A stretch of 64,000 bases of DNA from Lytechinus pictus (Eukaryota): the NCBI RefSeq assembly GCF_037042905.1, contig NC_087245.1, positions 21,266,001 to 21,330,000 of the forward strand, read 5' to 3'. The translations under genes were made by a program, and so were the position numbers. Below, piece after piece: positions 1,689 to 47,568 of this stretch (its first letter is position 1; each line of letters starts with the position of its first letter). The notes under the pieces were generated by a model. That model searched no databases and was not told the origin of the DNA. It worked only from the letters and a program-made list of their open reading frames with translations.

Positions 1689-1824
1689 NNNNNNNNNNNN
1701 NNNNNNNNNNNNNNNNNNNNNNNNNNNNNNNNNNNNNNNNNNNNNNNNNNNNNNNNNNNNNNNNNNNNNNNNNNNNNNNNNNNNNNNNNNNNNNNNNNNN
1801 NNNNNNNNNNNNNNNNNNNNNNNN
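1689..1824. other. Assembly gap (136 N)
   Basis: Run of N. Confidence 0.99.
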
Positions 1825-25510: not shown

Positions 25511-28175
25511 TCAGTTAGTACCTTCTTTGCCACAAAGTCGTCTCCAGGCATCCACGGGAAAATGACAGAAAGCTGTCAAGATTCTGCTTACGTGTTGAAT
25601 GGTCCTCTCTTTTCTGTTCATGAACACATAGATCAGAGGATCCAGTAAGGAGTTTAGGTAGGCTACCCACATGGTCGTAACAGCAAAGGGATGACTGACG
25701 CTGATTTCAAAGGGACAAAAGTGGGTGACGCTGTAGGGTGTCCAACAAAGAATGGTAGTGAGTACCAACATTGCTCCTGAACAGAGAAAAAAAATGGAAA
25801 AAGTTACACATGCCAAACCCCTATAATACATAAGAGGTATAGTAATTTTATTTTTCTCCACAGTGTCGACAGTGCATTTGGTTTTCTGGATGTTTTATTT
25901 ATGTTTTTTCCATTGTTTGTCCTGAACGTTAGCGGTGAAAATATTTTTTTTTCAAAGGGCGTATATAGGCTGGGGCGTGCTCCCTCCCGCCGAGGCAGAG
26001 GAGTTCCGACACTAGCAAGCAAAACAAAGGTTGTACCCCTTATTCTGCTTTCAACAGCTGATTTCCCCAACTTTACAGTTCTACCTCCCAAGAGGTGCAC
26101 CCCGTACCACTTTAGTTCCAACTCCCCCAGGATGTGCACCCCCATGTTCAAACCAGCCTACGCCCTTGGTTTTTCCTACTTTGCCGATTGATCGACATGT
26201 ATATTTCTAAAATAACAATGAAGAAGAAAAAGAATTTCATGCAGTAAACTAGAATATAAGTTTGATTTCGACATCGCAATTTGTCATCATTATCAAGTAC
26301 TACTTGAACATAACATTTTGGAGTGAAACTTAAAATTATTTGTGTTCCGCGGAGTTGCCTTTCAGTTAAAGCGAAGGTAACTTGCAATATACACGTAGGA
26401 TTGCAATCCAGTGTCTTGGACTTGAAATCGATTAAATTTTTTTTTTATATGTAGGTGCAAAAAAAATCAGGAATATTCAGTATTACCCACTAAGGCAACT
26501 CGTTTTTCTCGGCTTAATCTTCGTTTCTTTCTTGATAACTTATTGCCGCTGCTCCTGTCCTCCCCACTGTCTGACGACGATGGGTTTATGCTCGACGAAG
26601 AACAGTTCTTTGGCTGATTGGAATCCGAAAGTTGCTGGGTGACACCAGTATGTTCATCAATTTGACCGGATATGGTATATGGCCCTGACGTCATGGTGTT
26701 CACCAATTGTTCGTCCTTCGTGTTAACGTGATGTGCAGGTTCATCGCCTTGAAATCCATAATTTTCTATTGCGGTAATTGGGAGATCGTCACGTTTTCCC
26801 CGATAATTATCAGCACTGTTGACACCATTCGTAAGCTCAATTTGAGTACTTGGAAATGAACACTCGTAACAATGCGGCCTTTGGTTTACATTCACCCGGT
26901 ACTTTCCATGGGCGTGTGACGCAGAGAATTTCTTAGATTCATCGTTCACTACTGTGGCTCTTCTTGTTGCGTCAAAGGAACGCAACTTCCGGTCACTCTT
27001 TAGGATGTGATATATGATGCATACATAGCAGATGATCATCACAGGGACGGTGATTACGAAAATGACTGTGGCCCAGATGGTATAATAGACACACGATTCA
27101 ACACCCCACTTAGGAGAACAATGGTGTGTATGCTCGGTGTATTCATAAGTGGTTAGAACACCGACTGCAGGAGGCAATCCGATGGAGATACAAGTAACCC
27201 ATACGAAAATAATGGTCAAATACATCCGACGTCTAGTTGGCGGGAAACGGGCTTGCCAGACGATGGAGAGGTATCGGTCCACGGCGATACACATGACATT
27301 GATGAAGTTGCCAATTGTGCAAGTTGTAGCGAAGAAGCCATTAATCTTTAGGACAAAATTGAAAGGCAGAAATAAACAAGGGGAAATAATTATCTATCCT
27401 AAGCAATTGTGGGACAAGCATGCTGTCGGAATAGACGTTTGTTTAAGAGTGAACTACACTGTTTCTACATTAAAGAAACAAGCATTGTTCAATTATGTTA
27501 AGGTGAAAGTTGGTCAATATAATCATGAACTATAGAACAAATTGTTTGCCAAACAGATATATATCGAATAACTTATCAAGAAAAAAAATTGTCTATGAAA
27601 TTCCCTTAATACAGTTTAGTTGTTGAGTGGGCCAACTTCTTAATGGCCCATACCCCCACCTCAAAAAAGGGGAAAATTGCAGACGAAGTGCAGCGTAGCC
27701 CATTCTGTTTACCAAAATTCACAGTATATTTTCAACGGCATAGTTAAAATGTATATGTATCAAGATTATCAATGAAGCACGTAGCCCCGAACTCGGAGTG
27801 TAATGCGTCCATTGCAAGACATTTCCCTTTTAAATTGAAATCCAACATTTTCCTTACCGTACAGACCGTTGCGTTGGTAGAAAGAAGGGTTCCACCATCA
27901 ATGACGGCGACGACAGAGAAACTCATGCTGAAGAGCACAACACCGAGGTCGATGATGTTAAGGTTGGCGATCAGGAGACTGTGATGGTGTTTTGTCTTCT
28001 GGGATGTCAGTATCTGTGTCATCGCCAAAATGTTCGCAAAGAACGAGGCAATCATGATAACCACAAGAGTGGTTGTTTCGAGTATTGCTTCTGGACTGTT
28101 CGACTCGTGCAAGGGTTCTCTGGTGATGTTTGAGTGCCATCTGCAGCTGCCTCCAGAGGAAAATGCCGAAAACAT
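25511..28175 (-). CDS. Orphan class A (rhodopsin-like) GPCR, copy A (3 coding exons, ~480 aa)
   Basis: Exons 28175-27858, 27345-26487, 25776-25511, GT-AG, phases 0 and 1. TM1 N (FANIL), TM2 NLNIID, TM3 C...IAVDRY, TM4 W, ECL2 Cys, TM6 CWTPY, TM7 NSLLDPLIY; long Ser-rich ICL3. Confidence 0.9.
25953..26168. mobile_element. MITE in GPCR-A last intron
   Basis: Imperfect TIRs CAAAGGGCGTA..GGCTGG / CCAGCCTACGCCCTTG. Confidence 0.45.
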
Positions 28176-30303: not shown

Positions 30304-31141
30304 ATGTTGTCGAACCGACTGTTCTTGTATGGAACTATTAAATCAGACCAACCCAATCATTCGTTTATTCCAAAGGAAGATCCACAAAGCTGTCGATTTC
30401 TTGGCACGGGAAAGACCGAGACAAAATGGCCGCTGGTGATCGCAACAAAATACAATTTTCCATTTCTCTTGGACTGTGAAGGGGAAGGCTACGTAAGTAA
30501 TGGTAGTTACTTTTTTTATCAGATATTTCTTTGCCTCAATATCGTGGTGACATCTGAGAACCAAAGAAATGAGCTGTAATAAAGAACATCACTGGTTTGA
30601 TTTTATCACTGATATAATAATACTTGATGTGGTCTTCTGTAAACAAAGGTGGTTTAGTTTTAGCACTATATTCTGTAGTATATTCGATATGCTGGCCTGA
30701 TGATTTGAAAAGAAATTACTTTTCAGTTGTGATTTGTTTTCTTTTGGAAAGAATCAATAATCATCAAATTATTGGTAATATACTCAGCACAAAACTTTAT
30801 TCCGTACCGATGACGTATTTTATGGTTGATAATGTCGATTAGGGGAAAGCGTTGGTTATACAGTGTCAACCTGTGAATGAAGTACTCTTTCACGATTTTC
30901 TCGNNNNNNNNNNNNNNNNNNNNNNNNNNNNNNNNNNNNNNNNNNNNNNNNNNNNNNNNNNNNNNNNNNNNNNNNNNNNNNNNNNNNNNNNNNNNNNNNN
31001 NNNNNNNNNNNNNNNNNNNNNNNNNNNNNNNNNNNNNNNGACATTTTTTCGGCATCACCAATTTTTCCAAAGGGTAGATAGCTCTGGGGAACCTTGATTT
31101 AAGCTACGCGTACCATTGTTCTCTTCATCCATTTATTTACA

Positions 31142-31224
<83 letters not shown>

Positions 31225-31311
31225 GCTACGCCTACCATTGTTCTCTTCATCCATTTCTTTACAATATTTAAATAAAAAGAGTTGCCAAAGCTGTTGTACA
31301 TGTATAACTTT

Positions 31312-31347
<36 letters not shown>

Positions 31348-36803: not shown

Positions 36804-39800
36804 TCACCTGTCAGTGCCCCGACAACAAAGACGGCTCCACGTCTTTCTTGGTACATTGCAGCAGGTTCTTACGATGGTCATCAGGTGTTGTACAGTGCTC
36901 TCTTTCCTATTGATGAAGACATAAACAAGCGGATCCAAAAGGGAATTCGCGTATGCCATCCACATGGTGACGGCAGCCCAGGAATGACTAGCGGGTGGGA
37001 AATGTGGGAAGTGTATGATGCAGTACGGTGCCCAACAGAATATCGTGGTGAGTATCAGCATGGCACCTGTATTGGGGAAAAAGCAGAGTGTGGAGAGTTT
37101 GTTCTTAGCCTCTACATGCATTTCCACTGCGAACATTAGTATATTCATTTTCATTAGAGAAATTGATTCTTACCCATTACACGACTAGCAATTCTTTTCG
37201 GGGTGAAGACCGGGGGCCGTTTCATAAAGCTGTTCGTAAGTTAAGAGCGACTTAAGACGACTAGTGAACCTTTCTTACGCGCTTAGCCATCGCCAATGAA
37301 TATACCATTTACCACAAGAAAGGATCACCAGTCGTTCTTAAAGTCGCTCTTTAATAACTTACGAACAGCTTTATGAAACACCCACCTGCTTGTCAAAGCA
37401 ATGTCAATATATATTATTTTTCTGAACAATCATTTGACAAACATCAAGCAAGCAACGCCTTAAATTCATTGCACTGTGTTCAAACGACTGTTTGATGCTT
37501 GGGTTTCTTTCCTTTCAGTCATGGAATCAAAATTAATATCTATAAAGGTCAATTGCAATTTTATCAAAATTGCAGGTAGGTCGATCAGCAAGCAAGGTGT
37601 CTGTCAGCTACTGCTTAATGGACTACTCTTGGCTATATCCCTGAAAAACAAAACGTTAAGAGCCCCATGCTGTGCTTTAAACATCTGAATTAATTTGTGA
37701 ATATTTACCTGTCAGTGCCACCCGTTTTTCTACGCTTAGTTTCCTTGCTGACATCTTATTTAGGATATTGTCATGATTCACACTTTGGTCCGAGTCCGCG
37801 TGCCTCCTCGTACGCTGATCATGCTCTTCTGTCTTCGATTCGGTTTGAGCTGAACCAGTCCCACGCTGACCATTGGCACTGCTGGATGCCTGGGTTCCTG
37901 AGTCACCTATCGGTAAGATCGGTAAGGACTGTGTCGGTGATAGACTGCACCTCTGTCCAGAAATTACATAGGGTCCTGGTCCCACAATCCTGGGTTCATA
38001 CTTGTCTACGATAACATCACGAAGATGGAGACTGTCGCCGTGAAATCCTCGGTTCACACGTGCTTCAGAGATACCGTCACTGTTGTGCTTCCCTAGGTTT
38101 GGATGCTCGGCGTTTACATTCGGCTGAAGCATTTGATTGTGATGTGTGGGGCATCCTGCATTCGGCCTAAGATTTGTTGAACCCTGCGGGCTTCCGCTGG
38201 ATCTGGACCCTGATAGTTGCTTGGATATTTTCCCGCTGGTTTTCATACCGTCGTAAACGCGGAGCTTCCGATCGCTCTTCCGGATGTGGTAGATGATGCA
38301 TGCGTAGCAGATGATCATCACGGGCACTGTTACACCGAAAATAACCGTGAACCAGATATAGAAGTAACTATGCACGTTCCAACTCGGAGAGCAATGGTGG
38401 GTATTCTCGGTGTACTCGAATGCAGAGAGGAACTCAAACGTCGGTGGCAAGGTGATTGTGACACTGACTACCCAAACGAAAGCAATCATGCAGTACACTC
38501 GATTTCGAGTTGGTGGAAAACGGGTCGACCAGACAATGGAGATGTAACGATCAACGGCGATGCACATGACGTTGGTGAAATTGCCAACGCTACACGTGAT
38601 GGCACAGAACCCATTGATCTGTATAGGAATTACGAAAAGTAGATAATGTCACGACTCAATAGAAATACTATAATGATCTACATAGACCACTTTACGGACG
38701 TTGTTGGATGATTCTTACTAAGATCTAGTAATCATCGTAATCAGGGTTGGGAGATCCCTTATCTTGAACTGTTATTAGTGATCCTTTGTCTTCAGTCAAA
38801 TTTACAGGCATTGCAAATTTCTGATTAAACGGACAAAACAAAATTTTGCCTATTAGTTAAATGACTTTTATACCAATCTATTTGGCTTGGAGTAGATGAG
38901 GAGTTGTTAAGGATCGGTGCTGACTCTATTAATATTTGATGTAAAAAATTGTGTGAGGTCAGATTTGAGTCGTAGGGAAATCGTTGTAGAGTCGGTTTAG
39001 ATTCAGTAAGGATTCGATGTATGAAAAAAAAAATATTGGTAACCATTTTCATGTTTTTGGAGTTAGTTTTAGTCATTGTATAATGGGTATAGCGTATGAT
39101 AAACAGTATTAAGAGGATATGTGTGGTCTGGACTCGATATGACGCTAATAATGTTTTTATGTTGCAGTGGGATCATTGTTGAATAACATTTTGTCGACGT
39201 AGCATAATAAAAACAAAGTTCAGGTTCTTGCATTATCCACCCTCGTATTGATATTGTCACACTGATATATTTTCTTCGCTGATGGTATTGAAACGTTGAG
39301 TGCTGGTTGTCAACATCCTGTTCATAATACTATTCAAACCAATTCCTGAAGTATGGGAATAACGGACAGAATAAATGCGCAGTAAATGCCTTTAGATATT
39401 TAAACTTTTATATCAAAGCGCAAAATATTCACTTAACCAAATGGCCAACTCGAAAAATGAGTTTAGTTGAAGAGTTCATTTCATTTATCGTAGAATCTAA
39501 AACCTCACCTTTTTACATTTAAATAAAAATACATGACATTGTTTGACAGTGTGAGTGTGGGATGGAATACTTAATACCAATCGTATTAAACTATTACCAT
39601 AAAACACTCCTAAAAATCCGAAAAGCGGTCGATCCTTACATGCTGATTTTGGTACTAATATCAAAGCACCTTTTTAGTTATACATACAATTTATTCTTCA
39701 TTCACATCATATCGCTCAAAGGAGATTCCGCGAGCTTGTTTACATACCATGTGTTGGAATGCTCCCCAGGGAGTGGAGAAGGTGCATACATTGTATGCAG

Positions 39801-41959: not shown

Positions 41960-42905
41960 TGCTGCAAACTCTTCTGATATAGCACTTATATTTATGGGAT
42001 GAATCGTAACTTAACAATTACTTGTTTAAACATTCTTTCTTGTTATACCGATATAGATAGCTCATAATCCGCAAAATCAAACTATGGTTTATTTCCAACT
42101 GAAAGGCGTAGACAGGCCACTGGGGTATATTCTCTCAGATTCGGGATCACACGTTTTCCTCATTTTGCTGTTAGTCTGTTAATGTCCACGATCCTGATCA
42201 CATGCTTGATGTATAGGTATATTCATTGATCCTTTATCCTCGAGCAGAGACCCAATTTACAAATGCTAGCTGTTAAATTACCACGTCTTTGTATGGGTTT
42301 CTAAGGAAATGTAATATTTTAAGAGTCACACCATGGAGGCGGACAAATAGATACCGTATTTTCGATCGTATATGTGACAATGAATCGAGTATCAAGATGT
42401 GAGATCAAAATGGATTGCAAATAAAAATGTCATAAGCCGCTACCAGCGTATTGCGTTTCTAGTAAACCGTGATACTGAATTTCATCGTTATTGTGTTTAT
42501 TACTGGCGTCCATTTCATGACTACGAGTAATTATTTCAAAATCCTGTTTGCACAATCACTTGTGTGGAGACATCGGTTCTTGTCGTGACTAAAATGTCAA
42601 CTGTCCTTCAAAGAGCTACACCCAACGTCGATTTTAATCTGTACGAGCAACGAAAAGATGAATTAAGTTACATTTGTTTTCTGTAAGCATTTCCAAAGAT
42701 TATTATTTAATCCCATAAATTTTCAGGACAAATAAACCTTAAGAAACGAAACATTAATCGGTTAACGAGTAAATAGGCAAAGAACATTTGCACTGTAATA
42801 TATATATTATATTGTGAAAGAAATGAATGGAAAATGGTAGGCGTAGCTTAAATCAAGGTTCCACAGAGCTATCTGTCCTTTGGAAATATTGGTGATGCCA
42901 AAAAA

Positions 42906-42977
42906 TGCCTCTGCCGGGATTCGAACCCAGGCCCCCAGCTTTGAACGCCGGTGCCTTAACCACTAGACCGCAGAAAC
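42906..42977 (-). tRNA. tRNA-like gene or pseudogene, anticodon UCA, repeat-borne
   Basis: 72-nt cloverleaf GTTTCTG-CG-GTCT-AGTGGTTA-AGGC-A-CCGGC-GTTCAAA-GCTGG-GGGC-CTGGG-TTCGAAT-CCCGG-CAGAGGC-A, immediately followed by T6. All four stems pair (with G-U). C8 and G32 are non-canonical. Confidence 0.6.
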
Positions 42978-43058
42978 GGGTTATGGCTAGGGCGACCCCG
43001 ATCCGATTGACCGTCAGACAAACAGATTTTCGACACCACCAATTAAATTTCCTTTGTC

Positions 43059-43195
43059 NNNNNNNNNNNNNNNNNNNNNNNNNNNNNNNNNNNNNNNNNN
43101 NNNNNNNNNNNNNNNNNNNNNNNNNNNNNNNNNNNNNNNNNNNNNNNNNNNNNNNNNNNNNNNNNNNNNNNNNNNNNNNNNNNNNNNNNNNNNNN
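43059..43195. other. Assembly gap (137 N)
   Basis: Run of N. Confidence 0.99.
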
Positions 43196-43368
43196 CGAAC
43201 CGCAGCACGCCACAAGAAAGTCATCACTTGGACAACAGACCGCCTGAAGATCGCTATACGCGTGAAACCCAGGGTAGCGGATCCAAGGTACGCTCAACAT
43301 GATACTTGCTCTACCCCACGGTATTGAGCACTTTCCAATACTCCAATGAACTGAATTTATCCTTAATT

Positions 43369-43422
<54 letters not shown>

Positions 43423-43449: not shown

Positions 43450-43780
43450 GAATAAAAATAATCACAATTGGTTTAGTAAATGCCGTAGATATAAAATCGA
43501 AGATTAAAAAAAAGGAGAATAGCTCTCAAAAATGAAAGGTAAAGTCACACTCTTCGTCAGTGCCCATCATGTGGCAAAAAAAGATAATTAAAAATCCGTT
43601 TCTGAAACAGTCGTGAAAAACATATTTGTTCATGGGCATACGGATTGTGAAACTCACCTTTCAAAGAAACGGATTTTGAATTCTCTGTCTTGCCTTTCAA
43701 TTTTTGAGAGCTATGCTCCTTTTAAAATCTACGATTTTATTTCTACGGCATTTACTAAACCAATTGTGATTATTTATTCC
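43450..43780. mobile_element. MITE with ~90-bp TIRs
   Basis: 43450-43540 (ATCACAATTGGTTTAGTAAATGCCGTAGA...GCTCTCAAAAATGAAAGG) is inverted at 43690-43780. Confidence 0.75.
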
Positions 43781-47169: not shown

Positions 47170-47380
47170 CATTGATTTCTTTTAAATGTGAGTTTTTAAT
47201 CCGTATGCCCATAAACAGACGTGTTTTTCACCACTGTTTCAGAAATAAATTTTGAATTCTCTTTTTTTTTGTCACATCATGGGCACTGACAAAGAGTGTG
47301 ACTTTACCTTTAATTTTGGAGAGCTATACTCCTTTAAAATCTACAATATTATTTTTTTACGGCATAACAATTGTGATTAC
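47170..47380 (-). mobile_element. Partial inverted copy of the 43450 MITE family
   Basis: Reverse complement of about 43460-43670. Confidence 0.65.
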
Positions 47381-47390
47381 ATACCTTGGA

Positions 47391-47485
47391 GGTAGCGCAT
47401 CCAAGGTACGTTCAACATTCTACTTGGACTATATACCCCACGGTATCGAGCACTTTTCCACTATCCAATGAACTGAATTGTTCAT
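47391..47485 (-). mobile_element. End fragment of the (TA)n-associated tRNA-carrying repeat
   Basis: GGTAGCGCATCCAAGGTACG...CCAATGAACTGAATT matches 43273-43360; followed by (TA)n. Confidence 0.7.
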
Positions 47486-47499
47486 ATAGAAATGAATAA

Positions 47500-47568
<69 letters not shown>

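What the first reader, a model, noticed from the sequence alone, without database searches (positions are those of the whole stretch)
42813..43371. (TA)n-associated mobile element carrying an internal, self-terminating tRNA gene
Seen: unlike a SINE, the tRNA (42977-42906, minus) is not at the element's 5' end. About 390 bp lie upstream, and the far end of that sequence recurs at 47391-47485. A T6 Pol III terminator follows the discriminator base directly, so a Pol III transcript would be tRNA only. The ~90 bp downstream recur at 31040-31141 and partly at 31221-31265. All ends abut (TA)n, the termini read TG...CA, and there are no TIRs. Known: some non-autonomous LTR elements carry small-RNA genes in their LTRs (5S in Cassandra; tRNA-containing TRIMs have also been described). 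Inference: a solo-LTR/TRIM-like or Penelope-mobilised element that disperses tRNA transcription units into TA microsatellites.
Basis: partly seen in the sequence, partly recalled or inferred. Interest (0 to 1): 0.75.

Follow-up and report, generated by a model that had tools for sequence, protein, structure and literature searches.

The report
Two retroelement tails, one tRNA-bearing
The proposed 559-base "element" is really two unrelated retrotransposon fragments lying head to head in one (TA)n tract; the left one is an old copy of a roughly 410-base, tRNA-carrying repeat that inserts the way Penelope-like retrotransposons do, not like an LTR element or a SINE.

Summary
The tRNA-like gene (42977-42906, minus strand, anticodon UCA), its T6 run and the (TA)n borders are real. 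The element as drawn (42813-43371) is not one unit.

- **Left of the masked stretch** is a family with at least 1,773 copies in this genome. The right side is a separate 12-copy family.
- **The left family** is a 403-410-base unit. Its 3' ends fall at only two fixed points, nearly always against (TA)n, and its 5' ends are scattered.
- **Its layouts**: head-to-tail arrays run up to at least 43 units, and about a third of loci are two-armed (two copies joined at their 5' ends). This is the published insertion pattern of Penelope-like elements (PLEs).
- **A possible mobiliser**: a young PLE encoding reverse transcriptase and GIY-YIG endonuclease, which also ends at (TA)n, is in the genome. It shares no tail sequence with the unit, so it remains unproven as the mobiliser.
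- **The right family** carries a hammerhead-ribozyme-like core typical of PLE tails.
- **Rejected readings**: LTR/TRIM, SINE, Helitron and MITE all fail.
- **The tRNA module** varies about three times less than its flanks.

Earlier follow-ups in this scan reported the same family on other DNA of this genome.

The parts
42813..43058 (-). Old copy (90.7% identical to the young unit) of the 410-nt tRNA-bearing repeat, covering unit positions 153-410. Its 3' end is at 42813 and its 5' side runs into the masked stretch.
42906..42977 (-). tRNA-like gene, 72 nt, anticodon UCA. It differs from the family's usual sequence at 5 positions, including U8 to C, and three stem pairs have become G-U.
   Evidence: 45.8 bits here against 60.9 bits in young copies
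42900..42905 (-). T6 run directly after the discriminator base, a Pol III terminator-type signal.
   Evidence: conserved across the family
42790..42812 (.). Short degenerate TA-rich tract bordering the 3' end of the copy.
43059..43195 (.). Masked or unread stretch (N). Not read, not filled and not interpreted.
43196..43371 (+). 3' part of a different, older, low-copy repeat (12 matches in the genome, 71-92% identical). Its 3' end at 43371 abuts (TA)25. In other copies the homology reaches at least 230 bp further 5'.
43238..43282 (+). Hammerhead-ribozyme-like motif of the minimal kind found in PLEs. The core reads CUGAAGA ... GAAAC, helix III has a one-base loop, and the predicted cut lies after 43276.
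   Evidence: 85% of cells are paired against 20-42% when the partners are slid, and two pairs show compensatory changes. Rfam does not detect it.
43371..43421 (.). (TA)25 microsatellite.
31040..31141 (+). Second fragment of the tRNA-bearing family, unit positions 306-410. Another N run (30904-31039) covers where its tRNA would lie.
31142..31221 (.). (TA)40 between two family fragments.
31221..31316 (+). Third fragment of the family, unit positions 367-410 followed by 1-54. It uses the alternative 3' end near unit position 55 and is followed by (TA)14 at 31320-31347.
47391..47485 (+). 5'-truncated copy of the right-side family, followed by (TA)36 at 47496-47568.

Best explanation
The window holds two separate, 5'-incomplete retroelement copies whose 5' ends face each other across the masked stretch and whose 3' ends face outward into (TA)n.

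**Left copy (minus strand).** It belongs to a non-autonomous retroelement with a 403-410-nt unit. On the tRNA strand the unit reads: about 237 nt of leader, a 72-nt tRNA-like gene, T6, then about 95 nt of tail ending in ...TTTCACA.

**How it most likely spreads (inferred).**
1. A long sense-strand RNA covering one or more units is copied by target-primed reverse transcription.
2. Copying starts at a nick in a (TA)n tract, at either of two TA-like patches in the RNA. This gives the two fixed 3' ends.
3. Copying stops at variable points, which gives the scattered 5' ends.
4. A multimeric or circular template gives head-to-tail arrays, and a second strand-primed copy gives the two-armed inverted form.
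5. The enzyme is most likely a Penelope-like RT/GIY-YIG protein supplied in trans.

**Role of the tRNA-like module (inferred).** It is not the 5' Pol III head of a SINE, and it cannot drive a unit-length transcript because T6 follows it. It is kept intact in the lineages that keep copying, so it probably helps the element in some way. Once inserted, individual copies such as this window's decay.

**Right copy (plus strand).** It is the tail of another, older PLE-type family with a hammerhead-like motif.

**Shown:** family sizes, end positions, layouts, the TA association, the coexisting PLE, and the lower variation of the tRNA.
**Inferred:** the RNA template, the enzyme and the module's role.
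For: - **Different families.** The left side has 985 candidates and its tRNA word occurs 1,773 times. The right side has 12 matches. They do not lie adjacent elsewhere.
- **Ends.** In 29 best-hit loci and 19 unbiased loci from one chromosome, 3' ends fall almost only at unit position ~410 or ~55, with three or four exceptions. 5' ends are spread over the whole unit.
- **TA association.** 23 of 26 arms in the unbiased set and 27 of 31 in the best-hit set have (TA)4 or longer at the 3' flank. TA runs are 0.4% of the window.
- **Layouts.** 6 of 19 and 7 of 21 loci are two-armed, with 5' ends joined. Arms range from 0.16 to 3.3 units, and one array has at least 43 units at a 406-bp period.
- **Literature.** PLEs (Naiad and others) prefer (TA)n, form tandem and inverted insertions, and have non-autonomous derivatives that form multicopy head-to-tail insertions (PMC8557442). 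Animal tandem 'retrozymes' are non-autonomous PLE derivatives of 170-400 nt (PMC7229834; bioRxiv 10.64898/2026.07.22.740005).
- **Conserved tRNA.** In a sample chosen on a different 32-base word, the 5' half of the tRNA diverges 1.1% against 2.6-3.9% in the flanks.
- **RNA fold.** The sense unit folds as a rod, -148.6 kcal/mol, z = -7.9.
Against: - No autonomous element sharing tail sequence with the unit was found. The 1.3-kb 3' UTR of the PLE shows no similarity beyond a terminal CA(C).
- No hammerhead is detected in the unit, unlike described animal retrozymes.
- RNA-seq shows only low, even cover. 41-69% of laid reads run on into unlike flanking sequence, and there are no start or end pile-ups. 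That looks like passive read-through, not an abundant dedicated transcript. The libraries appear unstranded.
- Target-site duplications cannot be read inside (TA)n.
- The junction between the two copies in this window lies under the mask.
- Both samples of copies were chosen using tRNA-containing queries, which may inflate the apparent conservation of the tRNA.
Confidence: 0.7

Rival explanations
1. It is a SINE-like element mobilised by a microsatellite-specific non-LTR (LINE) retrotransposon rather than by a PLE.
For: 5' truncation and fixed 3' ends are also LINE hallmarks. Microsatellite-targeting LINEs with restriction-like endonucleases are known (abstract of PMC4640811). No PLE tail match was found.
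Against: The tRNA is internal and followed by T6, so there is no Pol III head driving the whole unit. About a third of loci are two-armed, with both arms ending at the element's true 3' terminus, and multi-unit head-to-tail arrays are common. These are described for PLEs, not for LINE/SINE pairs. No partner LINE was sought or found.
Confidence: 0.12
2. 42813-43371 is one composite element, continuous through the masked stretch.
For: The two parts are adjacent, both abut (TA)n, and their 3' ends face outward like the arms of a single two-armed insertion. An RT that switches templates could in principle join two RNAs in one event.
Against: Copy numbers differ about 150-fold. No other locus joins them. 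The sides differ in age: the left is 91% identical to its family and the right 83-87% to its nearest relatives. A one-off chimera would not be a family.
Confidence: 0.05
3. It is a satellite-like tandem repeat spread at the DNA level, by unequal crossing-over or by excised circles that reintegrate, with no reverse transcription.
For: A 17.5-kb array with a 406-bp period exists, and many short arrays do too.
Against: Roughly one dispersed site per Mb on the one chromosome listed (50 word matches on contig C1, about 38 sites over 44.3 Mb), with fixed 3' ends, random 5' ends and two-armed inversions at (TA)n, is not what recombination or circle reintegration predicts.
Confidence: 0.05
4. It is a DNA transposon that targets TA or AT: a Helitron-type element or a Stowaway-like MITE.
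For: Helitrons insert at AT and mariner-type MITEs at TA.
Against: There are no terminal inverted repeats, no fixed 5' end, and no 5'-TC...CTRR-3' termini or 3' hairpin at the ...TTTCACA end.
Confidence: 0.03
5. It is a solo LTR or a TRIM-like LTR element carrying a small-RNA gene, like Cassandra.
Against: The TG and the CA belong to two families on opposite strands. Arrays are unit-to-unit with no internal region. The 5' ends are scattered. No paired-LTR structure appears in 48 loci.
Confidence: 0.02

Closest known systems
Non-autonomous Penelope-like elements and animal non-LTR 'retrozymes' (PMC7229834; bioRxiv 10.64898/2026.07.22.740005; non-autonomous Chlamys such as MRC1 in PMC8557442)
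   Same: The unit is short (about 400 nt) and non-coding. It forms head-to-tail arrays and dispersed truncated copies, its RNA folds as a strongly self-paired rod, autonomous PLEs coexist with it, and some arrays reach satellite size.
   Different: No hammerhead ribozyme is present; a complete tRNA-like gene with its own terminator sits about 100 nt from the 3' end instead. No sequence similarity to a PLE tail or pLTR was found. No abundant or circular RNA was seen in the reads available.
Naiad and other (TA)n-preferring PLEs (Craig et al. 2021, PMC8557442)
   Same: (TA)n insertion bias, tandem and inverted complex insertions, and (for Naiads) no canonical hammerhead.
   Different: Those are autonomous and protein-coding. 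I found only a canonical PLE with a C-terminal endonuclease here, and did not establish whether Naiads exist in this genome.
tRNA-derived SINEs
   Same: It contains a tRNA-derived module with intact A-box and B-box consensus, is non-autonomous, and has thousands of copies.
   Different: The tRNA is internal (unit 238-309 of 410), is complete with a discriminator base, and is immediately terminated by T6. Copies do not start at the tRNA. Two-armed and tandem layouts are frequent.
Cassandra/TRIM LTR elements with 5S genes
   Same: A small-RNA gene rides inside a non-autonomous retroelement.
   Different: There are no LTR pair, primer-binding site, polypurine tract or fixed termini here.

Membership tests
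LTR retroelement (solo LTR / TRIM / Cassandra-like) | Both termini fixed (TG...CA) within one repeat unit | tested here: not met
   5' ends are scattered over the unit. The TG and the CA belong to two families on opposite strands.
LTR retroelement (solo LTR / TRIM / Cassandra-like) | Two-LTR forms enclosing an internal region with a primer-binding site and polypurine tract | tested here: not met
   Arrays are contiguous 403-410-bp units with nothing between them. The motifs themselves were not searched for.
tRNA-derived SINE | tRNA-derived Pol III head at the 5' end that drives transcription of the whole element | tested here: not met
   The tRNA lies at unit 238-309 of 410 with T6 at 310-315. 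Only about 4 of 57 arms begin near position 238-243.
tRNA-derived SINE | 3' tail shared with a partner LINE | not tested
   No LINE search was made.
PLE-dependent non-autonomous element / non-LTR retrozyme | Tandem (pseudo-LTR) and inverted two-armed insertions with variable 5' truncation | tested here: met
   description in PMC8557442
PLE-dependent non-autonomous element / non-LTR retrozyme | Microsatellite ((TA)n) insertion bias | tested here: met
   23 of 26 and 27 of 31 3' flanks carry (TA)n, against a 0.4% TA-run background in the window.
PLE-dependent non-autonomous element / non-LTR retrozyme | 3' end similar in sequence to an autonomous PLE of the same genome | tested here: not met
   No similarity to the 3' UTR of the one young PLE family whose tail was recovered. 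Other PLE families' tails lay outside the loci fetched, so this is inconclusive for them.
PLE-dependent non-autonomous element / non-LTR retrozyme | Hammerhead ribozyme in each unit (defines retrozymes) | tested here: not met
   No hammerhead at E up to 1 in three loci, and no CUGANGA...GAAA core seen by eye in the unit. Rfam also missed the minimal motifs in the PLE tail and in the right-side family, so its blank is weak evidence.
PLE-dependent non-autonomous element / non-LTR retrozyme | Abundant unit-length linear or circular RNA | tested here: inconclusive
   Low, even cover and reads running into flanks. The libraries are unstranded cDNA and not suited to circles or small RNA.
Helitron / MITE | Fixed termini (TC...CTRR with a 3' hairpin, or terminal inverted repeats with a TA duplication) | tested here: not met
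Working tRNA gene (selenocysteine or opal suppressor) | tRNA-Sec shape (long acceptor and variable arms), or conservation of individual copies as host genes | tested here: not met
   It is a 72-nt class I cloverleaf. The window copy has 5 changes and drops from 60.9 to 45.8 bits. In-frame TGA in PLE genes is CGA decay, not a Cys position.

The most novel reading that the evidence does not exclude
The tRNA-like gene is a working part of the element that takes the place the hammerhead holds in other PLE tails and retrozymes. It sits about 100 nt from the 3' end, as the hammerhead-like motifs do in the two PLE-type tails seen here. It and its T6 are the least variable part of the unit.

It could act in one of three ways:
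- as a TFIIIC/Pol III-bound module that keeps source arrays open for transcription;
- as a small tRNA-like RNA made for the element's own use;
- as a handle for tRNA-processing enzymes on the rod-shaped unit RNA.

That would make this a new sub-type of PLE-dependent element that has swapped a ribozyme for a tRNA.
Probability: 0.15. Interest if true: 0.75.

Novelty: new variant of a known kind. Interest (0 to 1): 0.45.

Why it matters
For this locus, the finding corrects the annotation. It is two elements, not one, and neither an LTR element nor a SINE.

At family level it adds a case to the recent picture of short tandem non-coding repeats that ride on Penelope-like retrotransposons. This one has no ribozyme but carries a conserved, complete tRNA-like gene. 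The role of structured RNA modules in PLE tails is still open in the literature, where the hammerheads are described as of unclear function (PMC8557442). A family that carries a tRNA instead gives a natural comparison.

It also explains why tRNA scanners will report about two thousand 'opal-suppressor' or 'tRNA-Sec' genes in this genome. They should be masked as repeats.

Tried and rejected
- **Hammerheads in the unit.** Rfam on three loci found none. Rfam also found none in the PLE tail or in the right-side family, so for those I relied on a manual core and pair counts.
- **Shared tail with a PLE.** BLAST at word size 7 and a local alignment of the unit against 16 GIY-YIG loci gave nothing above shuffled controls.
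- **Selenocysteine or UGA link.** Naiad selenoproteins are described in PMC8557442. The only in-frame TGA codons in PLE genes here align with Arg (CGA decay) or lie in a host SLX1-like gene. Rejected.
- **DNA-level inverted repeat around the tRNA.** The alignment score was 19 against a shuffled mean of 14.3 and maximum of 29, so not significant. The rod is an RNA-level property that uses G-U pairs.
- **5' ends defined by RNase P or RNase Z.** There is no pile-up at unit position 238 or 310, and multi-unit arms contain uncut internal tRNAs.
- **Origin of the tRNA.** The host tRNA-Gly(UCC) is 49/72 identical, with an identical T arm. About 25 old copies carry TCC, but that number is within what random decay of old copies could give, so an ancestral Gly anticodon is not established.
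- **Host tRNA survey.** The RF00005 search of the genome scored only one tRNA cluster and did not help.
- **RNA reads.** No circular or 'goes back' joints were seen. The opposite-strand joints match genomic two-armed copies.

Full report
**What is at the coordinates.**
- The sequence shows a degenerate TA tract, then unique-looking sequence from 42813.
- A 72-nt tRNA-like gene lies on the minus strand at 42977-42906. ARAGORN labels it 'SeC' only because the anticodon is TCA. Rfam tRNA scores it 45.8 bits.
- A T6 run follows it directly.
- N fills 43059-43195, more sequence follows to 43371, and then comes (TA)25.
42833-42905 is 92% complementary to 31045-31117, and 43273-43313 matches 47391-47431.

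**The masked stretch.**
- The two sides had to be tested through other copies.
- The genome search returned the window's own place as loci L001 and L031. These carry letters where the window reads N, which I saw only after printing an alignment.
- I excluded both loci from everything that followed, and I make no statement about the content of 43059-43195.

**The two sides are different families.**
- The left side (42813-43058) has 985 first-look candidates, the best about 91% identical.
- A 32-base word from the tRNA's 3' half occurs 1,773 times in the 812-Mb genome.
- The right side (43196-43371) has 12 matches at 71-92% identity.
- None of 29 best-hit left-family loci holds right-side sequence. 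Of nine right-family loci, one has small left-family fragments about 300 bp away.
- In other right-family copies the homology continues at least 230 bp further 5'. A full left unit would need 152 more bases.
- The two families run on opposite strands with their 5' ends toward the mask. 'TG...CA' is therefore two outward-facing 3' ends.

**Anatomy of the left family.**
- I took the reverse complement of L022:1501-1910 as the reference unit (410 nt, tRNA strand). The tRNA lies at 238-309 and T6 at 310-315, and the unit ends in ...TTTCACA.
- Units follow one another directly at a period of 403-410 bp. One array has at least 43 units at 406 bp.
- I mapped arm ends in two samples: 29 best-hit loci, and 19 loci taken in chromosome order that were selected only by the 32-base word.
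- 3' ends fall almost only at unit position ~410 or ~55. Both sites lie just before TA-like patches of the unit.
- 5' ends are spread over the whole unit with no pile-up at the tRNA start.
- (TA)4 or longer lies at the 3' flank of 23 of 26 and 27 of 31 arms. TA runs are 0.4% of the window.
- 6 of 19 and 7 of 21 loci are two-armed: two copies joined at their truncated 5' ends, with 3' ends outward.
- The window holds three fragments: 43058-42813 (unit 153-410), 31040-31141 (unit 306-410, beside another N run) and 31221-31316 (unit 367-410 plus 1-54).

**Which mechanism.**
- Fixed 3' ends with random 5' truncation indicate target-primed reverse transcription of a sense-strand RNA.
- Head-to-tail multimers, two-armed inverted insertions and a (TA)n preference are the published signature of Penelope-like elements. 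Their non-autonomous derivatives also make multicopy head-to-tail insertions (PMC8557442).
- Short tandem 'non-LTR retrozymes' of 170-400 nt are regarded as non-autonomous PLE derivatives (PMC7229834; bioRxiv 10.64898/2026.07.22.740005).
- The genome has a young canonical PLE with RVT_1 followed by GIY-YIG in a 598-aa open frame.
- That PLE's copies end at ...CACAC|(TA)n, use an alternative 3' end before an internal TA-like patch, and occur as two-armed pairs.
- Its 1.3-kb 3' UTR shows no similarity to the unit. The partner is therefore a candidate, not a demonstration.
- LTR/TRIM, SINE, Helitron and MITE each fail a defining feature (see Membership tests).

**The tRNA-like module.**
- In young copies it is a perfect cloverleaf scoring 60.9 bits, with consensus-like A and B boxes by my reading.
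- The window copy has five substitutions, including U8 to C, and scores 45.8 bits. Individual copies therefore decay.
- In the sample chosen on the 3'-half word, the unselected 5' half of the tRNA diverges 1.1%, and the T6 region 1.0%. The flanks diverge 2.6-3.9% (9 mismatches where about 25 would be expected).
- This fits selection on the source copies, but both samples were chosen with tRNA-containing queries.
- The host tRNA-Gly(UCC) is 49/72 identical, with an identical T arm.
- T6 directly after the discriminator is a gene or primary-transcript feature, so the module came from a gene or pre-tRNA and not from a mature tRNA (inference).
- The whole sense unit folds into a rod, -148.6 kcal/mol, z = -7.9. 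Forcing the cloverleaf inside the full-length RNA costs about 23 kcal/mol.
- T6 and a nearby T5 rule out a unit-length Pol III transcript.
- I found no sign of UGA recoding in PLE genes.

**RNA evidence.**
- In two raw-read RNA-seq runs of the same species, reads cover the unit evenly at low depth, with both mate orientations equal.
- 41-69% of laid reads continue into unlike sequence, and no start or end pile-ups appear.
- This looks like read-through of embedded copies. It neither supports nor excludes a dedicated template RNA.
- Runs under four further coded species labels hold 59-67% of the unit's sampled words, against up to 90% in the source species.

**The right-side family.**
- Twelve copies share an invariant CUGANGA ... 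GAAAC core flanked by complementary strands.
- With a hammerhead type I pairing scheme, 85% of cells pair, against 20-42% when partners are slid. Two pairs show compensatory changes, and no shuffle reaches the covariation score (0 of 500).
- Helix III has a one-base loop, as I recall for the dimer-acting minimal hammerheads of PLEs. That is recollection, not checked here.
- Rfam does not detect the motif.
- Copies end at (TA)n, and one locus is two-armed.
- It is best read as an older PLE-type tail.

**Verdict.**
- Several earlier follow-ups in this scan reached similar family-level readings on other DNA of the same genome. I re-tested the architecture, the copy number and the conservation myself.
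- Those notes call the organism a sea urchin. I did not verify that.

Noticed in passing
window 43238-43282 (+), and loci L032-L042: A hammerhead-ribozyme-like motif sits in the low-copy repeat right of the mask: a CUGANGA...GAAAC core, U-U at the base of helix II, and a one-base loop in helix III. Rfam does not detect it, but pair counts and two compensatory changes support it.
   Followed up: partly
window 1689-1824, 30904-31039, 43059-43195: Three N runs of 136-137 bases. Two of the three abut copies of the tRNA-bearing repeat, and the one at 30904-31039 covers exactly where that copy's tRNA would lie. I did not read them.
   Followed up: no
G000:C2:8866134-8883623: A satellite-size array of the same unit, at least 43 copies at a 406-bp period, all with the tRNA word intact.
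   Followed up: no
L046-L055 (for example L053:7-1803 and L049:2940-3139): A young canonical Penelope-like element (RT plus C-terminal GIY-YIG) with a 1.3-kb 3' UTR that contains CUGACGA...GAAAGC hammerhead-like words. It ends at (TA)n, has an alternative 3' end, and occurs as two-armed pairs at C8:37.40 Mb and C19:10.76 Mb.
   Followed up: partly
G000:C13:22.08-22.16 Mb and G000:C4:9.70-9.74 Mb: Dense clusters of host tRNA genes: about 30 tRNA-Gly(UCC) genes within 80 kb on C13, and dozens of tRNA genes within 36 kb on C4.
   Followed up: no
window 43511-43646 versus 47198-47335: An inverted repeat, 86-92% complementary, lies just outside the two copies of the right-side family. It may be a further arm or another repeat family.
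   Followed up: no
window 26467-27294 (-) and 37677-38567 (-): Two open frames with rhodopsin-family 7TM receptor matches (7tm_1, E about 1e-19). The repeats lie between GPCR-like genes.
   Followed up: no
L063 and L064 (tRNA region near 1493-1579): Two old family copies carry 10-15-base insertions or duplications inside the anticodon arm, so ARAGORN calls them odd tRNAs.
   Followed up: no
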